Positions 7,040 through 40,844 of a DNA stretch of 64,000 nt are shown here, piece after piece. The stretch covers positions 186,001-250,000 of IMG/VR virus record IMGVR_UViG_3300022602_000024; one strand, 5' to 3'. The notes beneath the pieces are model-generated. The model was not told where the DNA came from. It saw nothing but the letters and a program-made list of their open reading frames with translations, and did not search any database. The translations under genes were made by a program, and so were the position numbers. Numbering within the stretch: position 1 is the stretch's first letter; each line of letters opens with the position of its first letter.

Positions 7040-8155
7040 TTAAACACCCAAGTTGTAGGACTTAGACCATATGGGTTTTAGTTTACCAATACCGCCAGGT
7101 GTAACAAACGCATTTTGATTTAAAAAATTGTAGAACTTTTTGTCTGACAAAAAATTATAAATTGATCGTAGATATGTCATTCCCACTTTGTTTTCTGCAC
7201 TTATTATATCGCGTAAAAATTTTTCTCCGTTTCTAAGTTGCAAATCAGGAGTTACTTCTAAGCTATAATATCCTTCGGAGGAACTGATATATATTTTTTG
7301 AAAAGCACTCATACCAGGTATTAACTCTGGGTGCCGCCCGTGTATGTTGTAAATTAATTGATATTCGAGCTTATTTGTTTCTCTGACACGTGGATCGGCT
7401 ACAAGATTTGGTTTGTCAGGTCTTGTTTGTTGTATCATTTTCAAGGTATTTTTTGCAATATGACTTTGTTTTAAATTAATCATTGGTTCGAGAAAAAAAC
7501 AATCAATATTTTCGTGTCCAAATGACAGTGAAGACAAGATATCATTTTGTTTACTATACCAATAAGGTGCTTCGTAATAAACTGAAGATTTTTCAAGTCC
7601 TAATACAACCACATAATCGGTATCATTGTATTTTCTCTGACAATAAATGTTAAAGTATTCAGCATCAGCGGCCCGTCCCACTTTTAAAAAACGACCCTTA
7701 TTTTGAAACATCCAGTCATCGCCGTACTCAGGATGTTCTTCGTAAATTATATTATCTTTATCAACTGTGGGTAGTTTAACAACTGTTATTTCTGTTGTTG
7801 GGTCTGGATGATTTTCGACCATCCATTTTGCATGAGCATTGATGGTAGTGATGTCGTCAACAAACACCATTATTTCGTCTATATGAATATTGTTTTGTAC
7901 AAAAATATTGTATATGGTATGGCTATCAGTCCCCCCAGACCAAGGAAGTATGATTTTCTTATGTTTGTTTCTAAGGAAGACTGCATGGCGAGTCATTAAC
8001 TCGTCTATGGTTTCTACCGGGTCTTGAGTCCAATTCAGTTTACTGTATTCAGCATCGAAACAATAAAATGTAATTGGTTTGTTGGATTTGTAGGACTCGT
8101 AATAAGCAAGATAAGGGTTATATAAGATTTTATTATTTACTTGATAATGTAGCAT
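7040..8155 (-). CDS. PP-loop (adenine nucleotide alpha-hydrolase-like) ATP pyrophosphatase family protein
   Basis: WSGGTDS PP-motif near N-terminus; substrate unknown. Confidence 0.65.
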   Translation of the reverse strand: MLHYQVNNKILYNPYLAYYESYKSNKPITFYCFDAEYSKLNWTQDPVETIDELMTRHAVFLRNKHKKIILPWSGGTDSHTIYNIFVQNNIHIDEIMVFVDDITTINAHAKWMVENHPDPTTEITVVKLPTVDKDNIIYEEHPEYGDDWMFQNKGRFLKVGRAADAEYFNIYCQRKYNDTDYVVVLGLEKSSVYYEAPYWYSKQNDILSSLSFGHENIDCFFLEPMINLKQSHIAKNTLKMIQQTRPDKPNLVADPRVRETNKLEYQLIYNIHGRHPELIPGMSAFQKIYISSSEGYYSLEVTPDLQLRNGEKFLRDIISAENKVGMTYLRSIYNFLSDKKFYNFLNQNAFVTPGGIGKLKPIWSKSYNLGV

Positions 8156-8169
8156 AGGAGTTTGAAGAG

Positions 8170-8491
8170 ACTGGTAGCTTATTCTGTTACGAGGAAAGCT
8201 ACCGAAACCCTAAGCAGTGTTTAGGCTGCTAATGCGAACAGTTCGTCGTTTGCGTTTACGTTTTTTGCTTCTACGACCGGGTTACCCCAATCCTAACGGG
8301 TTTCACATTCCCGAGCGCCACTATTCTTACTCTTTGCCCAATCGATCACCATGTCAGGCCCATCATAAAAACACAATACCAAAGTAAATTTACAGTGAAT
8401 ACCAAAGTAAATTTATGCTCTTATGGTGGACCTGGAGGCTTCGAAGCCTCTTCTTGAACACTTTTCTTAATAACAGTTTACGCTGTTCAAG
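8170..8491 (-). ncRNA. ssrA: Circularly permuted (two-piece) tmRNA: acceptor piece ~8491-8424, intervening segment 8423-8362, coding piece 8361-~8170
   Basis: Acceptor stem GGGCCTG (8361-8355) pairs with CAGGTCC-A-CCA (8434-8424) with G3:U70; tag ORF 8253-8221 = ANDELFALAA*; helix 2 pairings TTGGGCA/TGTTCAA and TAAGAATAGT/ACTGTTATTA; CCA half lies upstream of 5' half. Outer ends approximate. Confidence 0.93.
8375..8415. repeat. 18-nt direct repeat in the tmRNA intervening segment
   Basis: AATACCAAAGTAAATTTA at 8375-8392 and 8398-8415. Confidence 0.95.
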
Positions 8492-8557
8492 TATTTATTA
8501 TATGGTATGTCGAAACCATTGTCAAGCGGTTTTACTTGGTTTCGACTAAATAATATT

Positions 8558-9055
8558 ATGCTACACAAACATCACATTATCCCAAGATATCTAGGCGGGA
8601 CAGACGATCCTTCTAATCTAGTTGAACTAACTATAGAGCAACACGCAGAAGCACATCGACTACTTTATGAACAACACGGCAATTGGCAGGACTATGTTGC
8701 GTGGCAAGGACTTGCCAAACTTGATGCTAACTTTGATGCCGCTAAACAATCTATGCTGGAAGGTAGCAGAAGAGGAACAGCCACGATGATTGCTAATCGT
8801 AAAGGAAAAAAGTGGGAAGAAATCTATGGGAAGAAAAGAGCCGCCAAAATAAAATCTAAATGTAAATTAAGTCGAAATGGCAAAACCTGGAACGGCAAAC
8901 TATATGAAATAACTCACCCAGATGGGACTGTGGAAACAGTTGAAGGATTACGCCAATGGTGTTTAGATCGAGGTTATAATCCTAACAACTTTGGAAACGC
9001 TTGTTTGAGAGGTGGTGTAACAAATGGTGGATTTAGGATTAAAAGGTTGGTTTAG
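8558..9055 (+). mobile_element. Free-standing HNH homing endonuclease (likely start MLHKHH at 8558)
   Basis: HKHHIIPRYLGGTDDPSNLVELTIEQHAEAH motif, basic NUMOD-like C-terminus; TAAATA 5 nt before ATG. Confidence 0.85.
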
Positions 9056-21189: not shown

Positions 21190-21507
21190 ATGGAAATTAT
21201 CATCGCTATTGTTATCGTAGTTGCTTTTGTTGCAGTATGGTACAACCGTCGTTCGCCAGCAGCACCTGTTGTCGAAGCAGAAACATTTTCTGACAACGGT
21301 ATCAAGTTCACAGCCAAAGAAGAAGCACCCGCACCAGTTGTAGCACCTGCTGCTCCTGCACCTGTTGTGGCCGAAACAACACCTGCCAAGAAGCCACGTG
21401 CCAAAAAGCCTGCGGTAGTGGCAAAAACTGCTACCAATGCTAAGAAAGCATCAAGTGCCAAAAAAGCACCTGCTAAGAAACCAGCGAAAACTGCAAAAGC
21501 AAAATAA
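21190..21507 (+). CDS. Membrane-anchored protein with histone-H1-like K/A/P tail
   Basis: N-terminal TM helix; PAKKPRAKK repeats. Confidence 0.7.
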   Translation: MEIIIAIVIVVAFVAVWYNRRSPAAPVVEAETFSDNGIKFTAKEEAPAPVVAPAAPAPVVAETTPAKKPRAKKPAVVAKTATNAKKASSAKKAPAKKPAKTAKAK

Positions 21508-22658
21508 TGATTGTTGATCCCGCATTCGGAGTTTATGTAGACTCCGAAAGTGCTCGCTGGCACTTTAATCAGTTTGCGGTATTACAATTTAGATACGACT
21601 TATTTAATAGGACTATAGATGACTTTGTCACTACAGACCGTTATGTAAGTCGTATCGCCGCTTTTCACGTACCATTTCCCGCAGAGCACACTTGGCTGGA
21701 GCGAGTAGAAAGACTGTTGCCATTGTGCCGGCACATATTTGTATTTTGCAGTGAACTACATGATCGCACAGTAGAACAACTGCGTAGCCTGGATAGACCC
21801 AACATCAGCATTTACGCCTGCGGAGTATTTGCAGAGCCATTTCAACACGCAACACAGGGTGCTTGGATGGATTGGTTGCATACTAGTAGCGAGTTTTATG
21901 CACGAACAAAACCTGGCTTTTTAGATGACAAATTAACACCTTACAAGCCTAAATCTCTGTCGTTTGATGTCCTGTTGGGCAATCAACGCACGCATAGAGA
22001 TTTTGTATATAACTATGTAAACGATTACATAAAAGACCACGCCGTAATGACCTATGTGTATCATGCACATTTACCAATCATCAACAGTGATAAGTTTATT
22101 ATGGAAACAGACGGAGTAGAGTTTGATGCCAATAGATCCTATACTCATAGCATAGACTCTGTTCGATATTATGGACGATGGATGACATTAAGCCAAGTTA
22201 TACCCTTAAAGATATACAATCAAACTGCGTACACTATTGTAACTGAAACCAACTTTAGCAATGACTATAATTTTTACACAGAAAAAATAGTTAAACCCAT
22301 ATTGGCACGCAGACTGTTCATTGTGATTGCTGGACAGAACTATTTGCGAAATTTACGTGCATTTGGTTTTAGAACCTTTGATGGTATCATTGATGAAACA
22401 TACGATACCATTGCCAACAATGAACAACGGTGGGCTGCCGCTATGGAGCAAGCACGTTGGCTAACTACCCAAGATCAATCCGCAATATTAAGTCAAGTAC
22501 AAGAGATTGCAGAACATAATTATCGATTGATCACTGAAAAAAACTGGTATCGAGATTTCAATCAAGTACTAGAACAAGAAGTGCAGGTATTAGTCGATAA
22601 TACCGAAATTAGCCCATCTAGCATCACCAAGACTTACCCATCCCAACGGCCCACCTAA
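21507..22658 (+). CDS. Glycosyltransferase-like protein (GT10-like TEK motif)
   Basis: IVTETN...YTEKIVKPI...GFRTF...IDETYD; paralog of 27229..28443. Confidence 0.5.
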   Translation: MIVDPAFGVYVDSESARWHFNQFAVLQFRYDLFNRTIDDFVTTDRYVSRIAAFHVPFPAEHTWLERVERLLPLCRHIFVFCSELHDRTVEQLRSLDRPNISIYACGVFAEPFQHATQGAWMDWLHTSSEFYARTKPGFLDDKLTPYKPKSLSFDVLLGNQRTHRDFVYNYVNDYIKDHAVMTYVYHAHLPIINSDKFIMETDGVEFDANRSYTHSIDSVRYYGRWMTLSQVIPLKIYNQTAYTIVTETNFSNDYNFYTEKIVKPILARRLFIVIAGQNYLRNLRAFGFRTFDGIIDETYDTIANNEQRWAAAMEQARWLTTQDQSAILSQVQEIAEHNYRLITEKNWYRDFNQVLEQEVQVLVDNTEISPSSITKTYPSQRPT

Positions 22659-23849
22659 ACTGGGCATACTGTTGAACACAATAGCACCACGTGGTTGATT
22701 TGTGCTGGGAGGAGTATCACTAACTGATATCATAATCGATCCAATGCTTAATTGATTTACTGCGGTGGCACCATCAGGTGTCAGGGTAATGTTATTTTTA
22801 CCATTACTGCTGATAATTAACGACTGAGTACGCGGTGTACCTAGTACAGCAACATTAGTTGATTGTTTGCCGATTCCCACTTCAATTTCTTGATCCCATA
22901 TGCTCAGGGCCTGTGCTGGCTCAATAGTATTGATACCAACTCTACGTTGTGTTGTATACAAAGTATCACTTAATAGTGTTTCGCCCGACACTTGTAGTTC
23001 TTTTAGTTGTCCTACTTTTTGCAAGTTACTGTTGACAATAAACCCGCCTAGACTATTGCCATCAACAGCAACTTGTCCGCTAATGGTAATTTGATTTAAA
23101 TCTACGCCGTCGGTTTTAATTTTGGCAAGTGTATTGTTTAAAATGTCAGTTAGCATTGCAGTATCAGCACAAACTATTTTCTTTGCAGCAGAAACAACAT
23201 TTTGAAACAGGGGACTAGATTCGGGCATTGTTCCCGTAACATTCAAATCGCCCTCAATTGTAGCAGTGCCTTTGACTGTTAGGTCTTTAGTAAGCAGATT
23301 ATTTTCAACCACTGTGATATCATCAAATACACTTAGTTGGCAGGTAGTAGCTTTGTCATCAATACCGGTGCTGCCGAATTGCTGTATGATCCCACCTTCA
23401 ATTTGACTGCCCGACAATCGTAGTTCGGTTAAATCTAATGCAGTATGCTTGATACTACCATCAGGGAAAGTAACCGCTTGATTTTGCAATGCATTTACAA
23501 TGCTGGATTGAAACAATCCGTTAAAGTCAATCTGCCTTATTTGCGTATTAACTGAATCTTCAATCATTCGCAATGATTGTGCTTGAACTGTAGCAGATAA
23601 GTTTTGTGCAAGAGTATCAACTCTAGTGCTCAATTCAGTCTGTATAGAGGCAGCACTAATAGGTAACTTACTTAGATGTGCATCTATTTTTTGACTTAGC
23701 AGTGCAGTTAATACATCTGTGTAGTCCAGTGCACCCACAACTTCGTCAATCTTTTGTGTGATTGCTGCCATCGCTTGTGTTTGCACTTGCGATGTTATTG
23801 ATGTTACTATGCCTTGGACTATTGAATTTACGTGTGTGTCTATATCCAT
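22590..23849 (-). CDS. Putative structural/fibre-associated protein
   Basis: Helical N-terminus, beta-rich C-terminus with RVGINTIEP motif. Confidence 0.55.
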   Translation of the reverse strand: MDIDTHVNSIVQGIVTSITSQVQTQAMAAITQKIDEVVGALDYTDVLTALLSQKIDAHLSKLPISAASIQTELSTRVDTLAQNLSATVQAQSLRMIEDSVNTQIRQIDFNGLFQSSIVNALQNQAVTFPDGSIKHTALDLTELRLSGSQIEGGIIQQFGSTGIDDKATTCQLSVFDDITVVENNLLTKDLTVKGTATIEGDLNVTGTMPESSPLFQNVVSAAKKIVCADTAMLTDILNNTLAKIKTDGVDLNQITISGQVAVDGNSLGGFIVNSNLQKVGQLKELQVSGETLLSDTLYTTQRRVGINTIEPAQALSIWDQEIEVGIGKQSTNVAVLGTPRTQSLIISSNGKNNITLTPDGATAVNQLSIGSIMISVSDTPPSTNQPRGAIVFNSMPSLGGPLGWVSLGDARWANFGIID

Positions 23850-23851
23850 TT

Positions 23852-24586
23852 TTACTCGAATTGAATGCTCACTACATGTTCATAGTTCTTTTTAATGAGC
23901 GATTTATACATTAGGTTTTTATGAACTAAGAAGTTTACTGCTCCTGCGTCCATGCTAAACTTAGCTAATTGTTTGAAAAACATGGTTCTACGAGCAAATG
24001 CCCCGTAACTGACTGTACCCTTTGCTGGTTCATTAATTTCATAAACCATTGATGTCCAAAGTGTACGATCTTTAACGTCCCAGTTGTGACTTTCTACAAA
24101 CATACGTGTGTCTGTGCCATTGCGTACTGCAATAGGTTGACTAAAGTCACGGTCTTTGAAATCTTGATTTTTGTAGTCTCTAATGGTACTTATTACAAAG
24201 GCAGTTGCTAGACCGCAAATGTTGGCTATCTTGTTCTGCTGATCTAGGTCGCTGTCGGCAAATGTAAAATACTCATCCATTGCTACTACACAATCAAAAT
24301 GTTTTTTGTACTTGGCCAAATCTGCGGATGCAATGTATTGATATTTTACTTTTTGTGTATCTAAGAACGCTCTTGCAGCATCACTGATTTCTGTTACTGC
24401 GATTGTAGGAGCGCAGCAACTTAATATAGCAGGATTAAATCCCACAAACAAAACGCTTTGTGGTTCAAGATTCTCTGTGCGATATACACCGTCTAAGATT
24501 TCTTGTTTGCGTGCAACCACATCTGCAAACTTGGGATTAAATGTTAGCGCAGATAATACTGCATCAGTATAAGTTGTGAATGTCAT
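23852..24586 (-). CDS. Degenerate class I methyltransferase-fold protein (start MTFTTY)
   Basis: SVLFVGFN, FDCVVAMDEYFTF resemble MTase motifs I/IV without a canonical GxG. Confidence 0.45.
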   Translation of the reverse strand: MTFTTYTDAVLSALTFNPKFADVVARKQEILDGVYRTENLEPQSVLFVGFNPAILSCCAPTIAVTEISDAARAFLDTQKVKYQYIASADLAKYKKHFDCVVAMDEYFTFADSDLDQQNKIANICGLATAFVISTIRDYKNQDFKDRDFSQPIAVRNGTDTRMFVESHNWDVKDRTLWTSMVYEINEPAKGTVSYGAFARRTMFFKQLAKFSMDAGAVNFLVHKNLMYKSLIKKNYEHVVSIQFE

Positions 24587-24594
24587 AAAGTTAT

Positions 24595-25509
24595 TTATTG
24601 CTCGCGTATTAAATCCAATGTCACACAATGAAATCCACCTCCGAGTGTACGGCTATGACGTAATTCTAACGGGATAACTGTAAATTTATGTACTTCTAAA
24701 GTTCTTATTAAGTCTACCTGATTTCGATCAACAATAACAGTATACGGATCAACCACCAGCATGTTGAGTGCTATCCACTTGCTGGCATAAGGATATTGAT
24801 AAAAGTCCTGTGCCACAACATCTGTGACCCAAATCTTCTCCCAGGAATCAAATGCTCGTGGGCAGTTGCTTTCATTTACACGACTGGCGTTTAACATTAC
24901 TAATCCTTCACGTAAGGGCACAATGGTTGAATCAATATGCACACCAGCGTAGAAGTTACATAGTTCAATATTGACTTCGGGAAAGCGAGCCACTAACCAA
25001 TCATATGCGGCACGGTTACCTGATGCACTTTCTAAAAATAACCAAGTGTCATTTAACCTCAATATGTTGGCCGCATCTAACACCATGCCCTGTTCTCGAC
25101 GCATATGAATAATGCTCCGGGATTTGTTTAATATATGTATATAACTACCGTACTCTTGATCTCTGCAGGGATACATCATGGGAGTATCTACAATGGTAGA
25201 TCCATATACTAAAAATCTATCCCGAGGACAATAATTGTATAACCCGTCATGACGTTGAAAATCATAAGTTGCTGGTCGGTCCACTTTGACTCCCAACTGT
25301 CCCAATGTACCGCACAGTTGATTTAGGTCTTCATTTGTTTCATCAATGATATGTTGCGGAACAGGTCCCGACGGCAAAGGAGTTTCTTTCCATAGTGTAC
25401 GTTCTGCTTCAGATCTAAATACTTTATCCTGAGTAGGCCAATTTGCAAATGCGGCATCACCGACTACTACTCTTTTCAATGGATCCCATTCATTGTAACT
25501 TGATATCAT
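24595..25509 (-). CDS. Amidinotransferase (glycine/inosamine-phosphate amidinotransferase family)
   Basis: SYNEWDPLKRVVVG, NYCPRD, HIDST, GGGFHCVTLD. Confidence 0.9.
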   Translation of the reverse strand: MISSYNEWDPLKRVVVGDAAFANWPTQDKVFRSEAERTLWKETPLPSGPVPQHIIDETNEDLNQLCGTLGQLGVKVDRPATYDFQRHDGLYNYCPRDRFLVYGSTIVDTPMMYPCRDQEYGSYIHILNKSRSIIHMRREQGMVLDAANILRLNDTWLFLESASGNRAAYDWLVARFPEVNIELCNFYAGVHIDSTIVPLREGLVMLNASRVNESNCPRAFDSWEKIWVTDVVAQDFYQYPYASKWIALNMLVVDPYTVIVDRNQVDLIRTLEVHKFTVIPLELRHSRTLGGGFHCVTLDLIREQ

Positions 25510-26024
25510 TTGTGTCCCGTTATTTGAAGTGTGTATCTGGGAATCATCCCTATGTTGGCTGCCATGTGTGGAGTATCATATGCCCATTCAACAACATCTC
25601 CGGCACGCCAGTGTATGATAACATCGTGTGCTATTTCTAAGTAGTGTCCACTAGACCAATCTTCTAAAAAAACAATTGCACGACGAATGTGTTGTTCTTG
25701 TCCTTGCAAGTCAAACAACTGTACATATTTTTTATACAGGTCTCGGTGCATGGGCAGTATAGCACCAGCATCCATGCGATAGTAACTGGTACCAATGTTT
25801 TTCCAACGTTTAGCAGTGAACAATTTTACAAAACTATCATTCCAGCTGGGTTGGGGACTACGCATATCACACATATAGCCAGTGGCAACATTTTGATAAC
25901 CAATAGTTGCCCATTCTGCCAACTTTTTATCGTCATTGAATTGTTCTCGAATGTAAGTCAAACTCTTATACTCATCATTCCAGAAAGGATCAATGCGATA
26001 TCTTTTGTAGCCTTGTGTTTCCAT
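25506..26024 (-). CDS. 2OG-Fe(II) oxygenase / cupin-fold hydroxylase
   Basis: PMHRD ... PHMAAN.G...RYTLQITG (HxD...H, R). Confidence 0.75.
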   Translation of the reverse strand: METQGYKRYRIDPFWNDEYKSLTYIREQFNDDKKLAEWATIGYQNVATGYMCDMRSPQPSWNDSFVKLFTAKRWKNIGTSYYRMDAGAILPMHRDLYKKYVQLFDLQGQEQHIRRAIVFLEDWSSGHYLEIAHDVIIHWRAGDVVEWAYDTPHMAANIGMIPRYTLQITGHK

Positions 26025-27228
26025 AATGTATTACCTTAATATTTGTGTTGTCTGTAGCAAATGTGCGCCAAGGATCAATAACAACGCTACCGTCTTCTAG
26101 ATGACAATATAATTGTTGTTCTCCGTCAACTCCAGCGTATCCGTAAGTAACTTTTTTATTGTGCGCCAGCAACACAATACCTCGTACTGATGTTGGCACT
26201 GATGGTTCTGTTAGTGGGTCAATATAGTTAGGAGTTATTCCGACCTCATTGAGATAATATCCAACTAGTAAACTGTAACTACCTTCTGTGAATGCCACAT
26301 CCGGCTTGTAGGCTTTGCCATGAATATATACTGGCAATGCGTAAGAATTATGATAACGTATGATATACTCGGCCATGTTTCGGGCCTGCTGTTCTCTAGC
26401 CAGCATGATGGTATCAAACAAGTCATAGCCCAAGTCTAGATTTTCAGCAAGATAACGCAAAGCAATGTTATCACGTGGGTGGCAAGGCCCAGCATCTCCC
26501 ATACCGGCAGTCATATACTTTGGTCCCATGATACGCATGCTGGATTTAGCCAGGGCCGTGGTTACTACATCAACATCAATGTTGCCTTGTTTGATGGCCA
26601 CATCTTGTATCATGTTTGCAAGACCAATCTTGGCGCTGATAAAAGTATTATAGAATACTTTGATACATTCTGCTTCGTCCCAGGTACCAACTTCGTAGCG
26701 TGGATCATTTTGCATTATGGTTTGGTAGAATTCAATCAGTAGTTTAGCATCGCCCGTGGTTGAGCCATCTTCAGTTCCAATAATGACCATTTCGGGATTG
26801 ACCATGTCCCAGGCCACACTACCCATGGCAATCAAATAAGGATTGTAGATAAAACGTGCTTGGTCCAACAAGTGTACAAATTCTCTGCGTGTGGTCCCTG
26901 GCAGTACTGTGCTGATAAGCACAACCAATTGTTCTGGGCTAGCCCATTGGTTGATTTCTTGTAAAACTTTTTTTACTATGCTATAATCAAAGTCTCGATT
27001 AGGTAAATGAGTAATGGGTTGCTCGCCACCATACACAGGATCATGTGGTGTTTGTACCGCAACAAATATAATGTCTTTGCCTGCAACTGCACCTCTGAGG
27101 CTGTCAGAAATTGTAATCTTGTCGCTGGTTCTTGGGTAAATATCATATCCAGTGACTTCATGTTTCTCTGCCATTGCTTCCGCACACGGCAATCCTAGCT
27201 TTCCAATTCCGATAAATCCAATTTTCAC
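25990..27228 (-). CDS. ugd: UDP-glucose/GDP-mannose 6-dehydrogenase family
   Basis: GIGKLG Rossmann, K..YNTF, GDAGPCHPRD catalytic Cys; GTG start. Confidence 0.9.
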   Translation of the reverse strand: MKIGFIGIGKLGLPCAEAMAEKHEVTGYDIYPRTSDKITISDSLRGAVAGKDIIFVAVQTPHDPVYGGEQPITHLPNRDFDYSIVKKVLQEINQWASPEQLVVLISTVLPGTTRREFVHLLDQARFIYNPYLIAMGSVAWDMVNPEMVIIGTEDGSTTGDAKLLIEFYQTIMQNDPRYEVGTWDEAECIKVFYNTFISAKIGLANMIQDVAIKQGNIDVDVVTTALAKSSMRIMGPKYMTAGMGDAGPCHPRDNIALRYLAENLDLGYDLFDTIMLAREQQARNMAEYIIRYHNSYALPVYIHGKAYKPDVAFTEGSYSLLVGYYLNEVGITPNYIDPLTEPSVPTSVRGIVLLAHNKKVTYGYAGVDGEQQLYCHLEDGSVVIDPWRTFATDNTNIKVIHYGNTRLQKISH

Positions 27229-28443
27229 ATGTTCTCCTTAGATAGATTTTACGATATATTGCACAATAATTTAGTTACTCATTTTAAACAGGCACGGTCT
27301 CTCTATCCCTACCCATTTGGTTCTTACGATCGTAGTATCATGTTATGCTCACGTCATGAAACTATGCGATTTACCAGTGAGTTTTTTACTAATTCGTTTT
27401 TTCATTGTTACTTTTTTGATCAAGAACCATATTATGATTACAGTTTAGATATTATTAGAAATTCATTTAGCAAATACAGAGACAATACAAATCAACCCAA
27501 TCGTATTAGCATACTAGCAAATAGTGAACATTCAGTCATGAAATCAAATTTTATCAAATCGGAAAAATTATACGATTGGTATTATTTCTTCCACGGATTT
27601 GCAGCATTAGATTGGTATAGAGATTTTCAGTATTTGAATCCAACTTCATTTAATCGATTTAACAAAGTATTTATATGTTACAATCATCTAACATCAAAAT
27701 ATCGATCATATAGATTACACTTAGTAAGTAATTTAATATCAAAGGATTTAGTTAAACATGGATCTGTTAGTTTATTCCTTAAAGATGATCAAGGCACATG
27801 GGAAGACACCGTCAAAGATCGCAGTCACCCATTGGATAATCGGGCACGAGTTAAAATTTATAATACGTTAAAAAATATAACAGAACCGTTGACTATCGAC
27901 ACTGACTCTCCCGATGGCTCAATGAGTGCCAATGTTGATATAAAACAATTAACAAGTGCCCTATGGCACGTGGTAACAGAAACAGTATACTTCCTGCCCA
28001 AGTTGCATTTAACAGAAAAAATATTTAAACCCATTGTGGCTCGACGTCCGTTTATACTAGTGGCTGCACCAGGTAATCTAGCGTATCTGAAAAGTTATGG
28101 GTTTCGTACATTTGATCGTTGGATAGATGAAAGTTACGACCAGGAACAGGATCATTATGTACGTATAGAAAAGATTACCAATGAAATTGAAAAGTTATGT
28201 GCACTCAGTCCTGAACAACTAAAACAAATGCACACAGAAATGCAAGAAGTATTAGAATACAACTTCAATCATTTCTATACAACATTCAAAATAGCTATAG
28301 TTAATGAATTAGTGGATAATTTTGCAGGGATATTAGGTCAAGTTAACAACGGCCGACAACCCAACAATCATAGTCCCCATCATACTAGATTTGAACTTGC
28401 TCCAGCATACTTAGAAGAGGTAAAAAAACGGTTGTCTAAATAA
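27229..28443 (+). CDS. Glycosyltransferase-like protein (GT10-like TEK motif)
   Basis: VVTETV...LTEKIFKPI...GFRTF..WIDESYD. Confidence 0.5.
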   Translation: MFSLDRFYDILHNNLVTHFKQARSLYPYPFGSYDRSIMLCSRHETMRFTSEFFTNSFFHCYFFDQEPYYDYSLDIIRNSFSKYRDNTNQPNRISILANSEHSVMKSNFIKSEKLYDWYYFFHGFAALDWYRDFQYLNPTSFNRFNKVFICYNHLTSKYRSYRLHLVSNLISKDLVKHGSVSLFLKDDQGTWEDTVKDRSHPLDNRARVKIYNTLKNITEPLTIDTDSPDGSMSANVDIKQLTSALWHVVTETVYFLPKLHLTEKIFKPIVARRPFILVAAPGNLAYLKSYGFRTFDRWIDESYDQEQDHYVRIEKITNEIEKLCALSPEQLKQMHTEMQEVLEYNFNHFYTTFKIAIVNELVDNFAGILGQVNNGRQPNNHSPHHTRFELAPAYLEEVKKRLSK

Positions 28444-28476: not shown

Positions 28477-29061
28477 ATGGCATTAACAGATTCAGTGTTA
28501 AACCTACTTAACAAAAAACCCAAAGACTCAGACTTACAAGCAGATCCCTTACGTCCAGCACGTGAAGCCAAGATGAAGGATCGTGCAGGTATGGTTATCA
28601 GTGTGTTTGCATTAATATTGGCAGTGAATGCCTGGTATGGCAATAAACTCAGCAGTGCTACACTAAATGATACCATTGCTGCCAATGATGTTTGGAGTTT
28701 TTACGAAGCCAAGAGCATTAAACAAATGTTAGCTGAACAAAGCCTAGACGATGCTGTCGTTCGCAAAGACACAGACAAAATTGCCAAATTAGAAGCCAAG
28801 ATTGCTCGCTATGAAAGCGATCCCAAAACTGGCGAAGGCAAAGTAGAATTAATGGCCAAAGCCAAGGCAATTGAAGCCGAACGCGACCATGCAAAAAAGC
28901 AAAGCCCATGGATTGGGTTTGCTAGTACCTTATATCAATTATCAATTGTTGTTCTATCCGCAAGCATCTTGGCAGTAAGTATGTCAATGTTCTGGGGCAG
29001 CTTTTTTGTTGCCGGGTTAGGACTATTACTTTCAGCACAAGGTGTCTTCCTCTGGTTCTAA
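28477..29061 (+). CDS. DUF4337-like membrane protein
   Basis: TM - NDVWSFYEAKSIKQ - coiled coil - two TM. Confidence 0.7.
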   Translation: MALTDSVLNLLNKKPKDSDLQADPLRPAREAKMKDRAGMVISVFALILAVNAWYGNKLSSATLNDTIAANDVWSFYEAKSIKQMLAEQSLDDAVVRKDTDKIAKLEAKIARYESDPKTGEGKVELMAKAKAIEAERDHAKKQSPWIGFASTLYQLSIVVLSASILAVSMSMFWGSFFVAGLGLLLSAQGVFLWF

Positions 29062-31767: not shown

Positions 31768-32481
31768 ATGTTGGCACTAATTTATACACTTGTGGTCACA
31801 CATATTACCATAGTATGTGTGACTTTGTTTTTGCATCGCGGTCAAGCACATCGCGGATTTGAATTTAATCCTGTAGTCGAACACTTTATGCGCTTTTGGT
31901 TATGGCTAACCACGGGCATGATTACTAAGCAATGGGTTGCTATACATCGCAAACATCATCAATACAGTGATTTAGCAAGAGATCCACACAGTCCTGTGGT
32001 ATACGGCCTATGGCGTGTGTTGTTTGGCGGTGCTTTGTTGTATAGTTCGGCAGCCAAAGATGCGGAAATGGTTGCCCAATATGGCGTAGGAACTCCAGAT
32101 GATTGGATTGAGCGTAACTTATATACCCCACATAACTTCACTGGCATAGGAATAATGTTGCTAATAGATATGTCTATATTCGGACCATGGGGATTTGTAG
32201 TATGGGCGGTGCAAATGTTATGGATACCGTTTTGGGCTGCAGGAGTTATCAATGGTCTAGGACACTGGTGGGGTTATCGCAATGGCAATTCTAGAGACAA
32301 TAGTCGCAACTTAGTGCCCTGGGGTATTATAGTTGGTGGAGAAGAACTACATAACAATCATCATTTGAGCCCAGCAAGACCCAAGTTAAGTCTAAAACCT
32401 GGTGAATTTGATATAGGGTGGATGTATATCCGTATACTACAAGCTCTAGGTCTTGTAAAAATCAATAGGCCTCTGCAATAA
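31768..32481 (+). CDS. Membrane fatty-acid desaturase (delta-9 / DesA-like)
   Basis: His boxes LHRGQAH, HRKHH, HNNHH; EFDIGW. Confidence 0.92.
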   Translation: MLALIYTLVVTHITIVCVTLFLHRGQAHRGFEFNPVVEHFMRFWLWLTTGMITKQWVAIHRKHHQYSDLARDPHSPVVYGLWRVLFGGALLYSSAAKDAEMVAQYGVGTPDDWIERNLYTPHNFTGIGIMLLIDMSIFGPWGFVVWAVQMLWIPFWAAGVINGLGHWWGYRNGNSRDNSRNLVPWGIIVGGEELHNNHHLSPARPKLSLKPGEFDIGWMYIRILQALGLVKINRPLQ

Positions 32482-33172
32482 ACTCTGCTTCGGGAATACG
32501 TGTATGCGTATTCTTACTACCAAGCACTACAACAATTCTACGTCCCACATCAGTATCTAACATCATTACAATGCATCCGCCTGATGCGTGTATGTAACCT
32601 GTTTTGCTGACAATAAAATTGTGTCGTTTGCCAATGACAGGGTTAGTATTATATAATATTAGCCAACGACGCTTCATACGAATCTTTACAATGGGACTAG
32701 CAGCCGCATCAACAATGGGTTTATACTTACTGGCTTCGGTTACTAGTTTAACCAACTCGCCGGCAGTACTGACATTAAACACACTGAGACCAGTTGCTTC
32801 GATAAAGTGAGTATGTGTCATACCTAACTGTTGTGCTTTGGCATTCATTGCTGTGACACAAGCAGTTTTACCGCCAGGGTAATAATCGCACAACAACTTT
32901 GCTGAGTTATTATCAGATTTTACCAACGCCATCATTATGCGTTGTTCTCTACTGACTCCTATTAAGTCAGTATGTGGATTTTGATCTGCATCTAACACCA
33001 CCATGACCGTCATTAGTTTACTAATGCTAGCAATAGGACGAACTTCTTCAATATTTTCGCTTTGTAATAACTTACCTTCACCGTCGGCCACTAACCAACT
33101 TGTAGCAGTTATTGTTTTAGCAAAGGTAGGTAATACAACTGTTGTTAACAACACCAATAAAAGTTTTTTCAT
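32462..33172 (-). CDS. pbpG: Peptidase S11 D-alanyl-D-alanine endo/carboxypeptidase (PbpG-like)
   Basis: Signal peptide; SISK (SxxK), SDN, KTG. Confidence 0.88.
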   Translation of the reverse strand: MKKLLLVLLTTVVLPTFAKTITATSWLVADGEGKLLQSENIEEVRPIASISKLMTVMVVLDADQNPHTDLIGVSREQRIMMALVKSDNNSAKLLCDYYPGGKTACVTAMNAKAQQLGMTHTHFIEATGLSVFNVSTAGELVKLVTEASKYKPIVDAAASPIVKIRMKRRWLILYNTNPVIGKRHNFIVSKTGYIHASGGCIVMMLDTDVGRRIVVVLGSKNTHTRIPEAEFIAEAY

Positions 33173-33302
33173 TTGGACTTATTAATGCTCGAAAGGTCGT
33201 TTAAGATAGCGTATGGCATAAAGTACAATTGTAGCATCCACCATTGGTTCAAGTCAAACCATTTGGCTAATAGTTTATCCAATACTGGGGGTACAATATA
33301 CA

Positions 33303-34124
33303 TTATCGTTGTGCCATTTGGAAACGTTTTTCCAAATCTTGTCTGCGATCCAAGTGAACTGCTTTGTTTTTACCAGGGTCAACGGTTTGAGTTGCGGCAG
33401 TTACGTTGTGTTGTCCACGACGTTTTAAATCTGGTTCAACTCTATTTTTCCAAAACCATAAACTTGTGCGTAAGGCTATTTCGGGTTTGGCAACCAAGTC
33501 GGGATTTTGAACTAATCTATCATCACCAAATATGTCTCTAGAGGCTGCAGTATAGTTCCAACGTCCTGTAAGCATAATAAACCCGCGTCCTTTAAAACGT
33601 GGACCGTCTCCGGGCTTTACATTGCCTAAACTTTTGCGTCCTTCATACTGTTTGCCTGAACTGTCTTCAACTAGTTTAGTAAACATAGCCGACTCATGCG
33701 CACATGTAGCTAAGAATGCCATTAGGTATGCACCAGTTATGTGTTCTGCTTCAGCAAACTTCTTTAAGATTGGTTCCAGCGGGGATTTAGTTACAGGAAT
33801 ATACTCGTGTTTAGCAGGTGCAACACCTTTTGCTTGTTGTGATGCAGGATGTGCCGGTGCCTTCGGGTTAGCGGCTTGAACTGTTGTAGTAGCCGCAGTT
33901 GCTAACTTTTCTTTTGCATCATTTAAGAACTGAATGATAATGCCAAGTTTGTCATCCTCTACTGGCGCAAGTGACATGTTATTTTGTTTACTATAATGTG
34001 TAACAAAATCATCCAGTTCGTCAGCTTTGGTGCCTGTAACACCTGCGGCTGCCGCGGCGCCTGCACCAAATTTTCTTAGGACATCGCGTCTAGTATCTTC
34101 GTTTAATATATCATGTAGGAACAT
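33303..34124 (-). CDS. GH19 chitinase-like lysozyme with twin-arginine-like N-terminus
   Basis: AHES, YEGRKSLGN..PGDG..FKGRG..MLTGR.NY; TRRDVLRK. Confidence 0.88.
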   Translation of the reverse strand: MFLHDILNEDTRRDVLRKFGAGAAAAAGVTGTKADELDDFVTHYSKQNNMSLAPVEDDKLGIIIQFLNDAKEKLATAATTTVQAANPKAPAHPASQQAKGVAPAKHEYIPVTKSPLEPILKKFAEAEHITGAYLMAFLATCAHESAMFTKLVEDSSGKQYEGRKSLGNVKPGDGPRFKGRGFIMLTGRWNYTAASRDIFGDDRLVQNPDLVAKPEIALRTSLWFWKNRVEPDLKRRGQHNVTAATQTVDPGKNKAVHLDRRQDLEKRFQMAQR

Positions 34125-34135
34125 GAAGTATTTAG

Positions 34136-34927
34136 TTAAATACCGTCAGGTCTATACTTTGAGTTCTTTGCTATTGCGGCATTCAAAACCGCTAAATTGA
34201 TGTCTAAATCACGTGCAATCTTAGCCAAAGCGGCAGTATCCTTAGGGAAACATGCACCTCCATAGCCTCTACTGCCGTCAGGCCCGGGTACTGCCCAATG
34301 ACTAGTGCCCAAGCGTGGATCTGTTTTGGCCATATCTGCAATAGTGGCCCAATCAATACCTAGAGATTGACACAGATCGTAATATTCATTATTAACTGTT
34401 ACTTTGATTGCTAACTGTGTGTTAGCCAAATACTTGAACATACTGGCTTCGGCTACTGTGCAGTAATCAATTTTTCCGTAAAACTTAACTGAACTTTTGT
34501 CGATCAATACCTTAGTAATATCTGCTCTGAGTCCTTCAGAGCACCCAATGACCACTTTGTGTGGTTCCAAGTAATCGTTGACTGCGTTTACCTGTGTTAA
34601 AAATTCAGGCACATGAGCAAAACGTAATCCGGACTCTTTTTCTAAATGAGTGTATACTGAGGGACTTGCAGTGCTTTTACTGATTACAAGACCTCGATAT
34701 CCAAACAGTTGTTCAACGACTAACTCTAATATGCTGGTATCACAAGCACCGTCTGCACTTTGTGGTGTAGGCACACAGATAAAAATAACATCGCATTTGT
34801 CTTTTAATTCGCTAAGTGGTCTGCTGATGTCCGGATATGCGGGATCATTGATCATTAACTCATCGGGTCTATAACTTGCTGCCACTGCTGAACCTACATA
34901 GCCGCGGCCTATAATGCCTACATTCAT
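34136..34927 (-). CDS. Short UDP-glucose 6-dehydrogenase family protein
   Basis: GRGYVG, PEFL, GYGGACFPKD; lacks C-terminal UDP-binding domain. Confidence 0.85.
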   Translation of the reverse strand: MNVGIIGRGYVGSAVAASYRPDELMINDPAYPDISRPLSELKDKCDVIFICVPTPQSADGACDTSILELVVEQLFGYRGLVISKSTASPSVYTHLEKESGLRFAHVPEFLTQVNAVNDYLEPHKVVIGCSEGLRADITKVLIDKSSVKFYGKIDYCTVAEASMFKYLANTQLAIKVTVNNEYYDLCQSLGIDWATIADMAKTDPRLGTSHWAVPGPDGSRGYGGACFPKDTAALAKIARDLDINLAVLNAAIAKNSKYRPDGI

Positions 34928-39869: not shown

Positions 39870-40844
39870 TTACTTAGCGTTCCATTCTGCACGGATTTTA
39901 TTTTTAACTCGGTCAGGTAAAACCAAATAATCTAAATCAGTTGCTGACTTATCGCCCTTGGTAAATGCCCAATCAAAGAATTTAGTCACTGCAGGTGTAC
40001 GGTCTAATCCTTTGTAAACAACAACAAATGTAGCACTGGTAATGGGCCAACCATCCAGGTTGTTTAAATCAACCGCAAATCCGGGAACGTCCCAGTTTGC
40101 TGATTTGGCCGAGACTGCAAATGTGGTATCATCGGGTTGAACAACTTGTCCTTTGCGATTTTTCATCACAACATAATTCATCTTGGCCTGCTTAACATAA
40201 GCATACTCTACATATCCAATGGCTCCAGGGAATTGTTGCACGTATGCAGCAACTCCAGGATTGCCTTTACCTGCCACAATACCTTCTTTACCAAAGATAA
40301 CTGTTTTACCTGTGCCCACATTCTTTTTAAATTCTTCGTTGACTTTGCTCAAGAAGTCTGTGAATACTGCGGTAGTGCCCGATGCATCACTGCGTACGAT
40401 CAGTGTGATTGCTTGATCTGGCAATGCTAACCCAGGATTTAGTTTAGCAATGGCTGCATCATTCCAGTTTAAAATTTTACGTTGGAAAATGTCTGCCAAA
40501 GTTCGTCCGTCTAGCACTAACTTGCCGGGTTCAACACCTTTGAGATTGATTACCGGAACAACACCGCCTACCGCAGTTGGAAATTGATAATAACCTTTTG
40601 CACGAATTTCATCTGTAGTAACAGGATCATCTGTGCCGGCAAAGTCCACGGTCTTTGCTTCGATTTGCTTCATACCAGCACCTGATCCCACTGGTTGATA
40701 GTTGATAGCAATACCAGTTTCCTTATTGTATTCTGCTGCCCACTTTGAATATAATGGACCTGCAAAACTGGAACCTGCCCCAGTTACTTGTGCTTGACTG
40801 ACCATAGCCACTGTGGCTAATAAAATTGCTAAGAGTTTGTTCAT
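39870..40844 (-). CDS. pstS: Phosphate ABC transporter substrate-binding protein PstS
   Basis: GAGSSF, YQPVGSGAG, DFAGTD, RSDASGTT, GAIGYVE, WPITSAT. Confidence 0.96.
   Translation of the reverse strand: MNKLLAILLATVAMVSQAQVTGAGSSFAGPLYSKWAAEYNKETGIAINYQPVGSGAGMKQIEAKTVDFAGTDDPVTTDEIRAKGYYQFPTAVGGVVPVINLKGVEPGKLVLDGRTLADIFQRKILNWNDAAIAKLNPGLALPDQAITLIVRSDASGTTAVFTDFLSKVNEEFKKNVGTGKTVIFGKEGIVAGKGNPGVAAYVQQFPGAIGYVEYAYVKQAKMNYVVMKNRKGQVVQPDDTTFAVSAKSANWDVPGFAVDLNNLDGWPITSATFVVVYKGLDRTPAVTKFFDWAFTKGDKSATDLDYLVLPDRVKNKIRAEWNAK

What the first reader, a model, noticed from the sequence alone, without database searches (positions are those of the whole stretch)
21507..28443. Amidinotransferase + 2OG oxygenase + nucleotide-sugar dehydrogenase + two GT-like paralogs around a structural gene
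One co-oriented block (22590-27228) encodes Ugd, a 2OG-Fe oxygenase, an amidinotransferase, an MTase-fold protein and a fibre-like protein. It is flanked on both sides by paralogous TEK-motif GT-like genes. Amidinotransferases make guanidino compounds from amines using arginine (established, e.g. creatine and streptidine pathways). Hypothesis: the block builds a guanidino- or uronate-containing glycan, or a modified amino acid, that decorates virion proteins, the host surface or DNA. I know of no characterised pathway with this combination in phages.
Basis: inference. Interest (0 to 1): 0.65.

Follow-up and report, generated by a model that had tools for sequence, protein, structure and literature searches.

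The report
Jumbo-phage guanidino-sugar glycan gene cluster
A 354-kb uncultured phage carries a conserved gene set that most likely makes an unusual guanidino- or uronic-acid sugar and attaches it to some target; no such sugar pathway has been characterised in any virus.

Summary
At the stated coordinates lie seven genes. Two are confirmed by sequence: a nucleotide-sugar 6-dehydrogenase and a StrB1-type amidinotransferase with all catalytic residues. Two are confirmed by fold: a PHD/P4H-type 2OG oxygenase (HxD...H...R invariant) and the TEK-motif paralogs, which are GT-B glycosyltransferases. The methyltransferase and fibre labels remain leads.

The genes are co-conserved. In 52 related phage loci with full flanks, the oxygenase is next to the amidinotransferase in 52, a divergent TEK glycosyltransferase is present in 51 and the dehydrogenase in 47.

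In four more distant lineages the oxygenase and amidinotransferase stay together in shuffled order. Each also has a short DegT-like aminotransferase within a few genes. Two have the dehydrogenase nearby, and one has a carbamoyltransferase, TEK glycosyltransferases and a radical SAM enzyme.

Best reading (about 0.5): a nucleotide-sugar tailoring route of oxidation, transamination and amidination from arginine, with the product transferred by the glycosyltransferases. The acceptor is unknown; the adjacent acidic fibre-like protein is a candidate. DNA modification is less likely: no hydroxylated-base or deazaguanine enzyme was found, and the glycosyltransferases are acidic.

Nothing has been tested biochemically. 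The only paper found lists a cyanophage homolog as an "antibiotic synthesis gene".

The parts
21507..22658 (+). GTa: TEK-motif GT-B glycosyltransferase paralog (383 aa). It converges on fib and overlaps it by 69 bp.
   Evidence: Paralog of GTb (E 5e-16). Member of the 97-protein TEK family in related loci. Fold inferred from the GTb model.
22590..23849 (-). fib: acidic protein (pI 4.5, 419 aa). The helical N-terminal part varies in length. The C-terminal ~260 aa are conserved and end in GWV.LG..W..FG. Possibly a virion fibre, possibly the glycan acceptor.
   Evidence: Present in 40 of 52 full-flank loci, and next to AT in the distant contig L096 (37% identity). Weak tail-fibre lead only. No Pfam, PHROG or PDB match.
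23852..24628 (-). MT: putative class I SAM methyltransferase-fold protein. The likely true start gives 23852-24586 (244 aa). It is found only together with fib.
   Evidence: Language-model features 0.93-0.94 to methyltransferase clusters. Homologs are 242-247 aa. No Pfam or PDB hit. Present in 32 of 52 loci, always with fib.
24595..25509 (-). AT: L-arginine-dependent amidinotransferase of the StrB1 type (304 aa). It lacks about 24 residues of a StrB1 segment.
   Evidence: 1bwd at E 1.3e-65 with the catalytic Cys-His-Asp aligned. Invariant residues. At least 7887 clusters of relatives in metagenomes.
25506..26024 (-). OG: small PHD/P4H-like Fe(II)/2OG oxygenase (172 aa). Its stop overlaps the AT start by 4 bp.
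   Evidence: AF2 model pLDDT 86. Foldseek and VIA matches to 2OG oxygenases, Z up to 15.1. HxD...H...R invariant. Adjacent to AT in 81 of 81 loci.
25990..27228 (-). Ugd: NAD-dependent nucleotide-sugar 6-dehydrogenase (412 aa, GTG start). The sugar it acts on is not assignable.
   Evidence: PF03721 and PF00984. TIGR03026 at 145 bits, below its cut-off. PDB UDP-glucose dehydrogenases at 1e-16 with the Cys aligned.
27229..28443 (+). GTb: TEK-motif GT-B glycosyltransferase (404 aa). It is transcribed divergently from Ugd with no intergenic base between the two start codons.
   Evidence: AF2 model pLDDT 84. GT-B matches in the PDB and among viral models. A divergent TEK glycosyltransferase is present in 51 of 52 loci.
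34136..34927 (-). Second, short nucleotide-sugar dehydrogenase-like gene (263 aa, no C-terminal domain). A possible accessory gene outside the finding.
   Evidence: PF00984 and PF03721. TIGR03026 at 147 bits. 24% identity to Ugd.

Best explanation
The block is the core of a phage-encoded glycan tailoring and transfer system.

Shown:
- It encodes a nucleotide-sugar 6-dehydrogenase.
- It encodes a PHD-like 2OG oxygenase.
- It encodes an amidinotransferase with an intact catalytic site.
- It encodes GT-B glycosyltransferases.
- These genes travel together across divergent phage lineages.
- Their other companions are a short DegT-like aminotransferase, a carbamoyltransferase and radical SAM enzymes.

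Inferred:
- Ugd makes an NDP-hexuronic acid.
- A sugar carbinol is oxidised to a ketone. The 2OG oxygenase is my candidate for this step, by analogy with KanJ- and SnoN-type sugar chemistry.
- The short DegT-like enzyme transaminates the ketone to an amine.
- The amidinotransferase moves the amidino group of arginine onto that amine, giving a guanidino sugar and ornithine. This is the oxidise, transaminate, amidinate logic of streptidine biosynthesis.
- Optional methylation, carbamoylation and acylation may follow.
- The TEK glycosyltransferases then transfer the sugar or sugars to an acceptor.

The acceptor is not established. The adjacent acidic fibre-like protein, or another virion or host-envelope component, is my first guess.

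Synteny within the clade:
- OG sits next to AT in 81 of 81 loci.
- In 52 loci with full flanks, OG is present in 52, a divergent TEK glycosyltransferase in 51, Ugd in 47, fib in 40 and MT in 32.

More distant lineages (AT 37-49% identical):
- L098 holds the whole set together: carbamoyltransferase, Ugd, short DegT, AT, OG, two TEK glycosyltransferases and a radical SAM enzyme.
- L100 has AT, OG and short DegT, with Ugd convergent on them.
- L097 has OG, short DegT, AT.
- Cyanophage S-SCSM2R has short DegT, radical SAM, GT, OG, AT, GT2.
- Shuffled order with retained membership argues for a shared pathway.

The same genome (G000):
- It carries the short DegT (61% identical to the one in L098) next to a GalE that passes its curated cut-off.
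- A second sugar region holds a NodU-like carbamoyltransferase, two SGNH proteins, a DegT, an SDR and the third TEK glycosyltransferase.

Other leads:
- A 788-aa predicted viral protein named for a Ugd N-terminal domain matches the GTb model at E 3e-14, which suggests a Ugd-GT fusion.
- The best solved relative of AT acts on an aminocyclitol, a sugar-like amine.
Against: - No substrate is known for any of the enzymes.
- In G000 the short DegT is 100 kb from the block.
- The keto-forming role of OG is pure inference. The closest folds to OG are protein prolyl hydroxylases and PiuC-type enzymes, so OG could hydroxylate a protein instead.
- Cellular AT homologs are fused to TauD- or HalD-type oxygenases and to NRPS or aaRS-like modules. 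That pattern points to amino-acid substrates in those lineages.
- Some phage AT homologs stand alone, for example between UvsW and UvsY in a T4-like contig.
- The fibre nature of fib is weakly supported.
- The 80 close loci are related phages, so their counts are not independent events.
Confidence: 0.5

Rival explanations
1. DNA hypermodification. The TEK GT-B enzymes glycosylate phage DNA, and the block supplies an unusual, possibly cationic guanidino sugar that protects the genome from restriction.
For: The two best solved-structure matches of GTb are the T4 DNA beta- and alpha-glucosyltransferases (Z 11.5 and 10.4; Foldseek rank 2). Phage GT-B DNA glycosyltransferases with nearby sugar-activating genes are documented (bioRxiv 10.1101/2023.12.21.572611; PMC13326640). 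The third TEK paralog lies about 6 kb from a thymidylate synthase gene and next to a P-loop kinase.
Against: The thymidylate synthase looks canonical: 349 bits to PF00303 and the Asn of the PFNIASY motif. No TGT/DpdA, QueC or ThyX was found. Tet_JBP also gave no hit, but its control rang in no genome, so that result is weak. The TEK family is acidic, median pI 5.8; I take that as untypical of DNA-binding glycosyltransferases, which is my expectation and was not tested. The Z margin over other GT-B families is only 1-1.6.
Confidence: 0.12
2. Small-molecule product. OG and AT, with MT, make a free guanidino metabolite. Candidates are a hydroxylated or methylated homoarginine- or arginine-like amino acid, a guanidinylated polyamine, or an antibiotic-like compound. 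Ugd and the glycosyltransferases would be only loosely associated, or would glycosylate that metabolite.
For: Characterised amidinotransferases act on small amines (glycine, inosamine phosphate, and the HsvA and SxtG substrates). Cellular homologs are fused to TauD- or HalD-type 2OG enzymes, DAO, NRPS A-PCP and aaRS-like modules. AT followed by a methyltransferase recalls creatine synthesis, and a viral GAMT gene is reported as an auxiliary metabolic gene (PMC11360552). The S-SCSM2R authors read their homolog as an antibiotic-synthesis gene (PMC12801897).
Against: The tight, lineage-spanning linkage is to Ugd, a sugar-type DegT aminotransferase and glycosyltransferases. No amino-acid activating or exporting genes sit nearby. 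MT is optional, present in 32 of 52 loci.
Confidence: 0.2
3. Protein hydroxylation followed by glycosylation. OG hydroxylates Pro or Lys of a phage protein such as fib, as in collagen, Skp1 or mimivirus L230 systems. The TEK glycosyltransferases glycosylate that site using UDP-GlcA. AT serves a separate purpose, or modifies a protein-bound amine.
For: The best OG fold matches include the EF-Tu prolyl hydroxylase, PHD2 and a chlorovirus collagen prolyl hydroxylase. fib is adjacent and co-conserved. In S-SCSM2R a second AT and a 2OG oxygenase were detected in purified virions (PMC12801897).
Against: This reading does not explain why AT is the invariable neighbour of OG, or why a short DegT joins them in other lineages. 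fib has no collagen-like or Pro-rich repeat. OG is present in 12 of 52 loci that lack fib.
Confidence: 0.1
4. The genes are neighbours without a shared function, and AT simply redirects host arginine and ornithine metabolism.
For: Some AT homologs occur alone in T4-like phage core regions. G000 scatters its sugar genes over three regions.
Against: OG and AT are adjacent in 81 of 81 loci with a 4-bp overlap. The pairing persists in four other lineages with different gene order.
Confidence: 0.04

Closest known systems
StrB1 and the streptidine branch of streptomycin biosynthesis (Streptomyces)
   Same: AT is a clear homolog of StrB1 (E 1.3e-65) with the same catalytic Cys-His-Asp and arginine-binding residues. 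The inferred sequence of oxidation, transamination by a DegT/StrS-family enzyme and amidination is the same.
   Different: The phage enzyme is about 44 aa shorter, with roughly 24 residues missing from one segment. No inositol dehydrogenase or inosamine kinase is in the block. The partners here are Ugd, a 2OG oxygenase and glycosyltransferases. The host is a phage, not an actinomycete gene cluster.
Synechococcus phage S-SCSM2R ORF305-310 (PQ898602; PMC12801897)
   Same: It has homologous OG (hhalign E 2.7e-22) and AT (37% identity) as adjacent genes among glycosyltransferases, a short DegT-like 'AHBA synthase' and a radical SAM enzyme. UGDH, GT10 and GT11 genes lie elsewhere in that genome.
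   Different: It is a T4-like cyanomyovirus. Its neighbouring glycosyltransferases carry other family names in the record (GT25, GT2) and are not TEK homologs (no tblastn match). The authors only annotated the genes and proposed antibiotic synthesis. No function was tested.
Virus-encoded virion glycosylation (mimivirus and chlorovirus glycan pathways; mycobacteriophage capsid and tail glycosylation)
   Same: The virus carries its own nucleotide-sugar modifying enzymes (dehydratase or epimerase, DegT aminotransferase) together with glycosyltransferases. The GTb model also matches uncharacterised mimivirus-like proteins.
   Different: As far as I know, none of these systems includes an amidinotransferase (my own knowledge, plus the searches). 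The acceptor here is unknown.
T4 alpha- and beta-glucosyltransferases and phage DNA glycosylation clusters
   Same: The GT-B fold. T4 BGT and AGT are the top structural matches of GTb.
   Different: No detectable sequence similarity. The TEK proteins are acidic. No hydroxymethylase, 5hoC synthase, TET or DpdA was recognisable in the genome.
GT10 alpha-1,3-fucosyltransferases
   Same: The GT-B fold (5zoi Z 9.9, FUT9 8.7, FUT13 8.6). An invariant ET...TEK...P motif in the C-terminal domain resembles the GT10 YxTEK nucleotide-sugar motif; I recall that motif from memory and did not test it.
   Different: No Pfam GT10 hit for any of 26 family members at E <= 0.1. Donor specificity is unknown.
Bacterial uronic-acid and amino-sugar pathways (Ugd-ArnA-ArnB; P. 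aeruginosa WbpA-WbpG ManNAc(3NAm)A)
   Same: A nucleotide-sugar 6-dehydrogenase combined with a DegT-type transaminase. In the Wbp pathway the product is an amidine-bearing uronic acid (my own knowledge).
   Different: The Wbp amidine is an acetamidino group made by an asparagine-synthase-like amidotransferase, not a pentein amidinotransferase. No ArnA- or WbpB-type oxidase is found here.

Membership tests
Amidinotransferase (pentein superfamily; StrB1/AGAT type) | Full-length sequence homology to characterised members | tested here: met
   1bwd at 1.3e-65; AGAT, HsvA and SxtG at 1e-22 to 1e-28.
Amidinotransferase (pentein superfamily; StrB1/AGAT type) | Catalytic Cys-His-Asp triad and arginine-binding Asp and Arg residues | tested here: met
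   C295 (GGGFHC), H191, D193, D97 and R116 are invariant, and D145 is at least 90% conserved. They align with StrB1 C332, H227, D229, D108, R127 and D179.
Amidinotransferase (pentein superfamily; StrB1/AGAT type) | Transfers the amidino group of arginine to an amine acceptor | not testable with these tools
   Needs an enzyme assay.
Fe(II)/2-oxoglutarate oxygenase (PHD/P4H-like DSBH) | Double-stranded beta-helix fold | tested here: met
   Model pLDDT 86. VIA Z 15.1 (3dkq), 14.4 (PiuC), 13.5 (P4H), 13.2 (PHD2, SnoN).
Fe(II)/2-oxoglutarate oxygenase (PHD/P4H-like DSBH) | HxD/E...H iron triad and a basic residue that binds 2OG | tested here: met
   H93, D95, H153 and R163 are invariant in 15 sequences. 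They are retained in homologs from S-SCSM2R, L098, L100 and L097.
Fe(II)/2-oxoglutarate oxygenase (PHD/P4H-like DSBH) | Match to a curated sequence family | tested here: not met
   No Pfam, NCBIfam, PHROG or PDB sequence hit.
UDP-glucose/GDP-mannose dehydrogenase family | NAD-binding and central domains with the catalytic Cys | tested here: met
   PF03721 at 5e-17 and PF00984 at 6e-15. The Cys of GPCHPRD aligns with GGSCFQKD of 2o3j.
UDP-glucose/GDP-mannose dehydrogenase family | C-terminal UDP-binding domain and an equivalog-level score that names the substrate | tested here: inconclusive
   PF03720 was not reported. TIGR03026 scored 145 bits against a cut-off of 190. No equivalog model passed its cut-off.
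GT-B glycosyltransferase | Two Rossmann-like domains with a C-terminal nucleotide-sugar binding motif | tested here: met
   Model pLDDT 84. All leading matches are GT-B enzymes, and 30 chains score Z 8 or more. The ET...TEK...P motif is invariant in 26 sequences.
GT-B glycosyltransferase | Assignment to a CAZy or Pfam family (for example GT10) | tested here: not met
   None of 26 members hits a glycosyltransferase Pfam family at E <= 0.1. The profile search of the PDB found nothing.
Class I SAM-dependent methyltransferase | Rossmann-like fold with a glycine-rich SAM loop and an acidic residue after beta-2 | tested here: inconclusive
   Only language-model similarity, 0.93-0.94. The loop reads VGF(S/N)P, and the E of VTEI is replaced by A in several homologs. 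No Pfam or PDB hit. No fold prediction was run.
Phage tail fibre or virion fibre | Homology to, or a fold of, known fibre proteins; presence in virions | tested here: inconclusive
   Atlas features score 0.91 with only 122 shared features to a PTL_trimer cluster, and the Atlas model is poor (pTM 0.24). No PHROG, PDB or cultured-phage match. Presence in virions cannot be tested here.
Phage DNA glycosylation system | An enzyme that creates a hydroxylated or otherwise reactive base (dCMP/dUMP hydroxymethylase, 5hoC synthase, TET/5mYOX, DpdA) | tested here: not met
   The only thymidylate synthase homolog looks canonical. There is no ThyX, TGT or QueC. The Tet_JBP search was negative, but its control rang in no genome.

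The most novel reading that the evidence does not exclude
A large, globally abundant group of aquatic phages (jumbo phages, a T4-like cyanophage and others) makes a guanidinylated sugar, possibly a guanidino-uronic acid. It does so by a previously unknown route: a 2OG oxygenase, a minimal DegT-like transaminase and a StrB1-type amidinotransferase. The sugar is installed on a virion fibre, or on DNA. This would be the first guanidino glycan in any virus and a new use of amidinotransferases outside secondary metabolism.
Probability: 0.3. Interest if true: 0.8.

Novelty: new variant of a known kind. Interest (0 to 1): 0.6.

Why it matters
Virus-encoded glycan pathways are known, but none is known to use an amidinotransferase.

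This gene set is not a curiosity of one contig. The amidinotransferase alone has at least 7887 clusters of relatives at 90% identity in metagenomes, and it recurs with the same partners in several phage lineages.

If the product is a guanidino sugar, it would add a permanently cationic, arginine-like group to the chemistry that phages use on their surfaces or genomes. That bears on adsorption, immune or defence evasion and particle stability.

It would also give glycoenzymology a compact three-enzyme route from a sugar hydroxyl to a guanidine. A cultured carrier, Synechococcus phage S-SCSM2R, makes the question directly testable.

Tried and rejected
Searches that found nothing:
- Pfam, NCBIfam and PHROG scans gave nothing for OG, MT, GTa, GTb or fib.
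- Single-sequence and profile searches of PDB sequences gave nothing for OG, MT, the TEK family or fib.
- Megablast of the block, and tblastn of fib and GTb, against 50,697 cultured-phage records found nothing.
- The sigma-70 promoter and terminator scan found no more sites than shuffled sequence.
- The window has no tRNA genes.

Leads that failed:
- Campylobacter phage CP220 has a distant AT in a cluster of radical SAM and GT-A genes. The 173-aa gene upstream of it is not detectably related to OG.
- S-SCSM2R ORF267 is not related to OG, although ORF266 is a distant AT.
- The 263-aa cluster c19 in related loci is not the short Ugd-like gene.
- The conserved neighbours c6 and c44 are a UvdE endonuclease and a radical SAM/SPASM protein, not structural proteins.
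- The scan of 185,579 species genomes returned only five hits. All are 61-68% identical contigs in MAGs, most likely phage contigs that were binned with bacteria. No cellular close relative emerged.
- The moraphage paper (PMC12619734) does not mention these genes.

Full report
**Setting.** The window is bases 186001-250000 of a 354,429-bp IMG/VR virus record estimated 98% complete, that is, a jumbo phage. GC content is about 40% throughout. Megablast of the block finds no cultured phage.

| Gene | Coordinates | Strand | Length |
|---|---|---|---|
| GTa | 21507-22658 | + | 383 aa |
| fib | 22590-23849 | - | 419 aa |
| MT | 23852-24628 | - | 258 aa (TTG start) |
| AT | 24595-25509 | - | 304 aa |
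| OG | 25506-26024 | - | 172 aa |
| Ugd | 25990-27228 | - | 412 aa |
| GTb | 27229-28443 | + | 404 aa |

- MT homologs are 242-247 aa, so the ATG giving 23852-24586 is the likelier start.
- The OG stop and the AT start overlap by 4 bp.
- The Ugd and GTb start codons are back to back with no intergenic base.

**Identities shown by sequence.**
- Ugd matches PF03721 and PF00984 and phrog_9148 at 6e-93.
- Ugd also matches UDP-glucose dehydrogenases in the PDB at 1e-16, with its Cys (GPCHPRD) aligned to the catalytic Cys.
- No equivalog model passes its cut-off, so the sugar Ugd acts on is open.
- AT matches StrB1 (1bwd) at 1.3e-65, and AGAT, HsvA and SxtG at 1e-22 to 1e-28.
- The residues aligned with StrB1 D108, R127, D179, H227, D229 and C332 are invariant or nearly so in 16 homologs.
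- AT lacks about 24 residues of the StrB1 135-173 segment.

**Identities shown by fold.**
- OG has no sequence-family hit.
- Its AF2 model (pLDDT 86) is a 2OG-oxygenase DSBH: Z 15.1 to 3dkq, 14.4 to PiuC, 13.5 to the P. putida EF-Tu prolyl hydroxylase, and 13.2 to PHD2 and SnoN.
- H93-x-D95, H153 and R163 are invariant in OG.
- GTa and GTb are paralogs (E 5e-16). A third copy lies at G000:79732-80949.
- The GTb model (pLDDT 84) is a GT-B glycosyltransferase: T4 BGT Z 11.5, T4 AGT 10.4, GT10 fucosyltransferase 9.9, and many other GT-B enzymes.
- The ET...TEK...P motif is invariant in 26 family members.
- No Pfam glycosyltransferase family is hit.

**Leads only.**
- MT resembles class I SAM methyltransferases by language-model features (0.93-0.94).
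- Its SAM loop is atypical, and the acidic residue after beta-2 is not conserved.
- fib is acidic (pI 4.5).
- It has a variable helical N-terminus and a conserved C-terminal domain.
- The only lead for fib is weak: a tail-fibre-like cluster at 0.91. Nothing was found in the PDB.

**Co-conservation within the clade.** A scan of IMG/VR with AT returned 98 matching stretches, of which 80 loci were kept (60-75% identity), several on contigs of 290-357 kb.
- OG is adjacent to AT in all 81 loci that carry AT.
- The counts below come from the 52 loci with at least 4.5 kb on both sides.

| Gene | Present in (of 52) |
|---|---|
| OG | 52 |
| Divergent TEK glycosyltransferase | 51 |
| Ugd | 47 |
| fib | 40 |
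| MT | 32, always with fib |

- The usual order is: GT (divergent), then Ugd, OG, AT, optionally MT, optionally fib, then variable genes, then often a second GT.
- These loci are related phages, so the counts are not independent events.

**Co-conservation beyond the clade.** A HMMER search of 1.84 billion representative proteins gave 938 relatives of AT. I looked at the contigs that encode some 40-50% identical ones.

| Locus | Gene order around AT |
|---|---|
| L098 (84-kb phage-like contig) | carbamoyltransferase, 275-aa gene, Ugd (divergent), then short DegT-like (194 aa), AT, OG, two TEK glycosyltransferases, and a radical SAM/SPASM gene |
| L100 | AT, OG, short DegT, with Ugd convergent |
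| L097 (TARA contig) | OG, short DegT, AT |
| L096 | radical SAM, AT, fib homolog (37% identity) |
| S-SCSM2R (cultured cyanophage) | short DegT ('AHBA synthase'), radical SAM, GT, OG, AT, GT2 |

- In S-SCSM2R, OG matches at hhalign E 2.7e-22 and AT is 37% identical.
- That phage also has a second, distant AT beside 2OG oxygenases and KdsA/KdsB.
- Its authors detected that second AT and one of those oxygenases in purified virions (PMC12801897).
- Shuffled order with retained membership is the strongest evidence that OG, AT and the short DegT act in one pathway, and that Ugd and the TEK glycosyltransferases belong with them.

**The rest of the genome.** G000 spreads the same set over three regions.
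- At about 110 kb lies the short DegT (206 aa). It is 61% identical to the one in L098, and the SFxxxK lysine is present.
- Its neighbours are a GalE that passes its curated cut-off and a GTP cyclohydrolase I.
- At 74-88 kb lie two SGNH proteins, a NodU-like carbamoyltransferase and a P-loop kinase.
- The same region holds the third TEK glycosyltransferase, a 1071-aa unknown protein, a full-length DegT, an SDR and a thymidylate synthase.
- A predicted viral protein of 788 aa, named for a Ugd N-terminal domain, matches the GTb model at E 3e-14. This suggests a natural Ugd-GT fusion.

**Mechanism.** The enzymes and their linkage are shown. The chemistry below is inferred.
- The AT-OG-DegT triad fits a conversion of a sugar C-OH to C=O, then to C-NH2, then to a guanidine. 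This is the logic of streptidine synthesis, where a dehydrogenase, a DegT/StrS-family transaminase and StrB1 act in turn.
- Ugd would supply the uronic-acid scaffold.
- The short DegT in G000 sits beside an epimerase, not a dehydratase, and no other keto-forming enzyme travels with the triad. I therefore propose that OG makes the ketone. That step is speculative.
- The TEK glycosyltransferases would then transfer the product.
- The acceptor is unknown. fib is a candidate because it follows AT in two divergent lineages.

**Rivals.**
- DNA modification is suggested by the T4 BGT and AGT matches.
  - Against it: the thymidylate synthase looks canonical (349 bits, Asn in PFNIASY).
  - Against it: no ThyX, TGT/DpdA or QueC is present, and Tet_JBP gave no hit, although its control rang nowhere.
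  - Against it: the TEK family is acidic (median pI 5.8).
- A free guanidino metabolite remains plausible.
  - For it: cellular AT homologs are fused to TauD- or HalD-type oxygenases, DAO, NRPS A-PCP and aaRS-like domains.
  - For it: all characterised amidinotransferases act on small amines.
- Protein hydroxylation plus glycosylation fits the closest folds of OG, but it does not explain the AT-DegT linkage.

**Literature.**
- Searches for amidinotransferases in phages found only annotation-level mentions.
- The S-SCSM2R paper calls the homolog an antibiotic-synthesis gene.
- The Campylobacter phage genome paper notes a possible glycine amidinotransferase.
- An ocean auxiliary-metabolic-gene survey highlights viral GAMT, not this gene.
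- Papers on phage DNA glycosylation do not involve amidinotransferases or Ugd.

**Verdict.** This is a real, widespread, uncharacterised phage pathway. It is best described as a new variant of virus-encoded glycan biosynthesis with an amidinotransferase branch. Neither the product nor the acceptor is known.

Noticed in passing
window 57496-58788 (-); G000:66949-73509 and other sites: A radical SAM/SPASM protein family has about 12 paralogs in this genome, five of them in tandem. Homologs sit beside the AT cluster in relatives (c44), in L098, L096 and L105, and in S-SCSM2R and CP220. The repeated pairing of radical SAM genes with phage amidinotransferases is unexplained.
   Followed up: partly
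L004:2340-4409 and 28 other related loci (cluster c9): A CHASE2 sensor domain fused to an adenylate/guanylate cyclase domain (about 680 aa) is encoded a few kb upstream of the cluster in many related phages. No homolog was found in G000.
   Followed up: partly
L051-L053, L074, L076 (cluster c43, e.g. L052:7386-7916): A NUMOD3-motif protein, probably a homing endonuclease, is inserted on the opposite strand between OG and AT in some relatives.
   Followed up: no
L049:11655-12782; L074:6184-7356 and 7635-8906; L075; L020:9938-11134: Some related phages carry one or two extra, very divergent amidinotransferase paralogs (375-423 aa) a few genes downstream of the main AT.
   Followed up: no
window 27226-27231: The GTG start of Ugd (- strand) and the ATG start of GTb (+ strand) abut with no intergenic base. 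Each gene's promoter must therefore lie inside the other gene. GTa and fib converge and overlap by 69 bp (22590-22658).
   Followed up: no
window 31768-34927 and 39870-40844: A run of host-like auxiliary genes: fatty-acid desaturase, D-Ala-D-Ala carboxypeptidase (S11), GH19 chitinase/lysozyme-like, a short Ugd-like gene, and further on a PstS-like phosphate-binding protein.
   Followed up: partly
window 56037-57047 (-): A UvdE UV-damage endonuclease. In most relatives its ortholog (c6) lies directly downstream of the AT cluster, but here it is 30 kb away.
   Followed up: partly
G000:109093-109842 (L102:6093-6842): A GTP cyclohydrolase I gene sits next to the short DegT and GalE, although no QueC or TGT/DpdA was found in the genome. 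An FAD-dependent oxidoreductase (DAO family) lies nearby.
   Followed up: partly
L088, L092 (Haliscomenobacter MAG); L089-L091 (other MAGs): Contigs with 61-68% identical AT genes are binned into bacterial MAGs (Haliscomenobacter twice, Legionella, Terrimicrobiaceae, Bacteroidetes). This is either mis-binned phage DNA or a faint hint at the host.
   Followed up: no
L104 (JGI 3300017719 contig): A 36% identical AT homolog stands alone between UvsW and UvsY, close to gp23 and the portal gene, in a marine T4-like phage contig. It has no OG, Ugd or DegT beside it.
   Followed up: no
window 28477-29061 (+): A DUF4337 protein directly downstream of GTb is conserved at that position in about 20 related loci. 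Its function is unknown.
   Followed up: no
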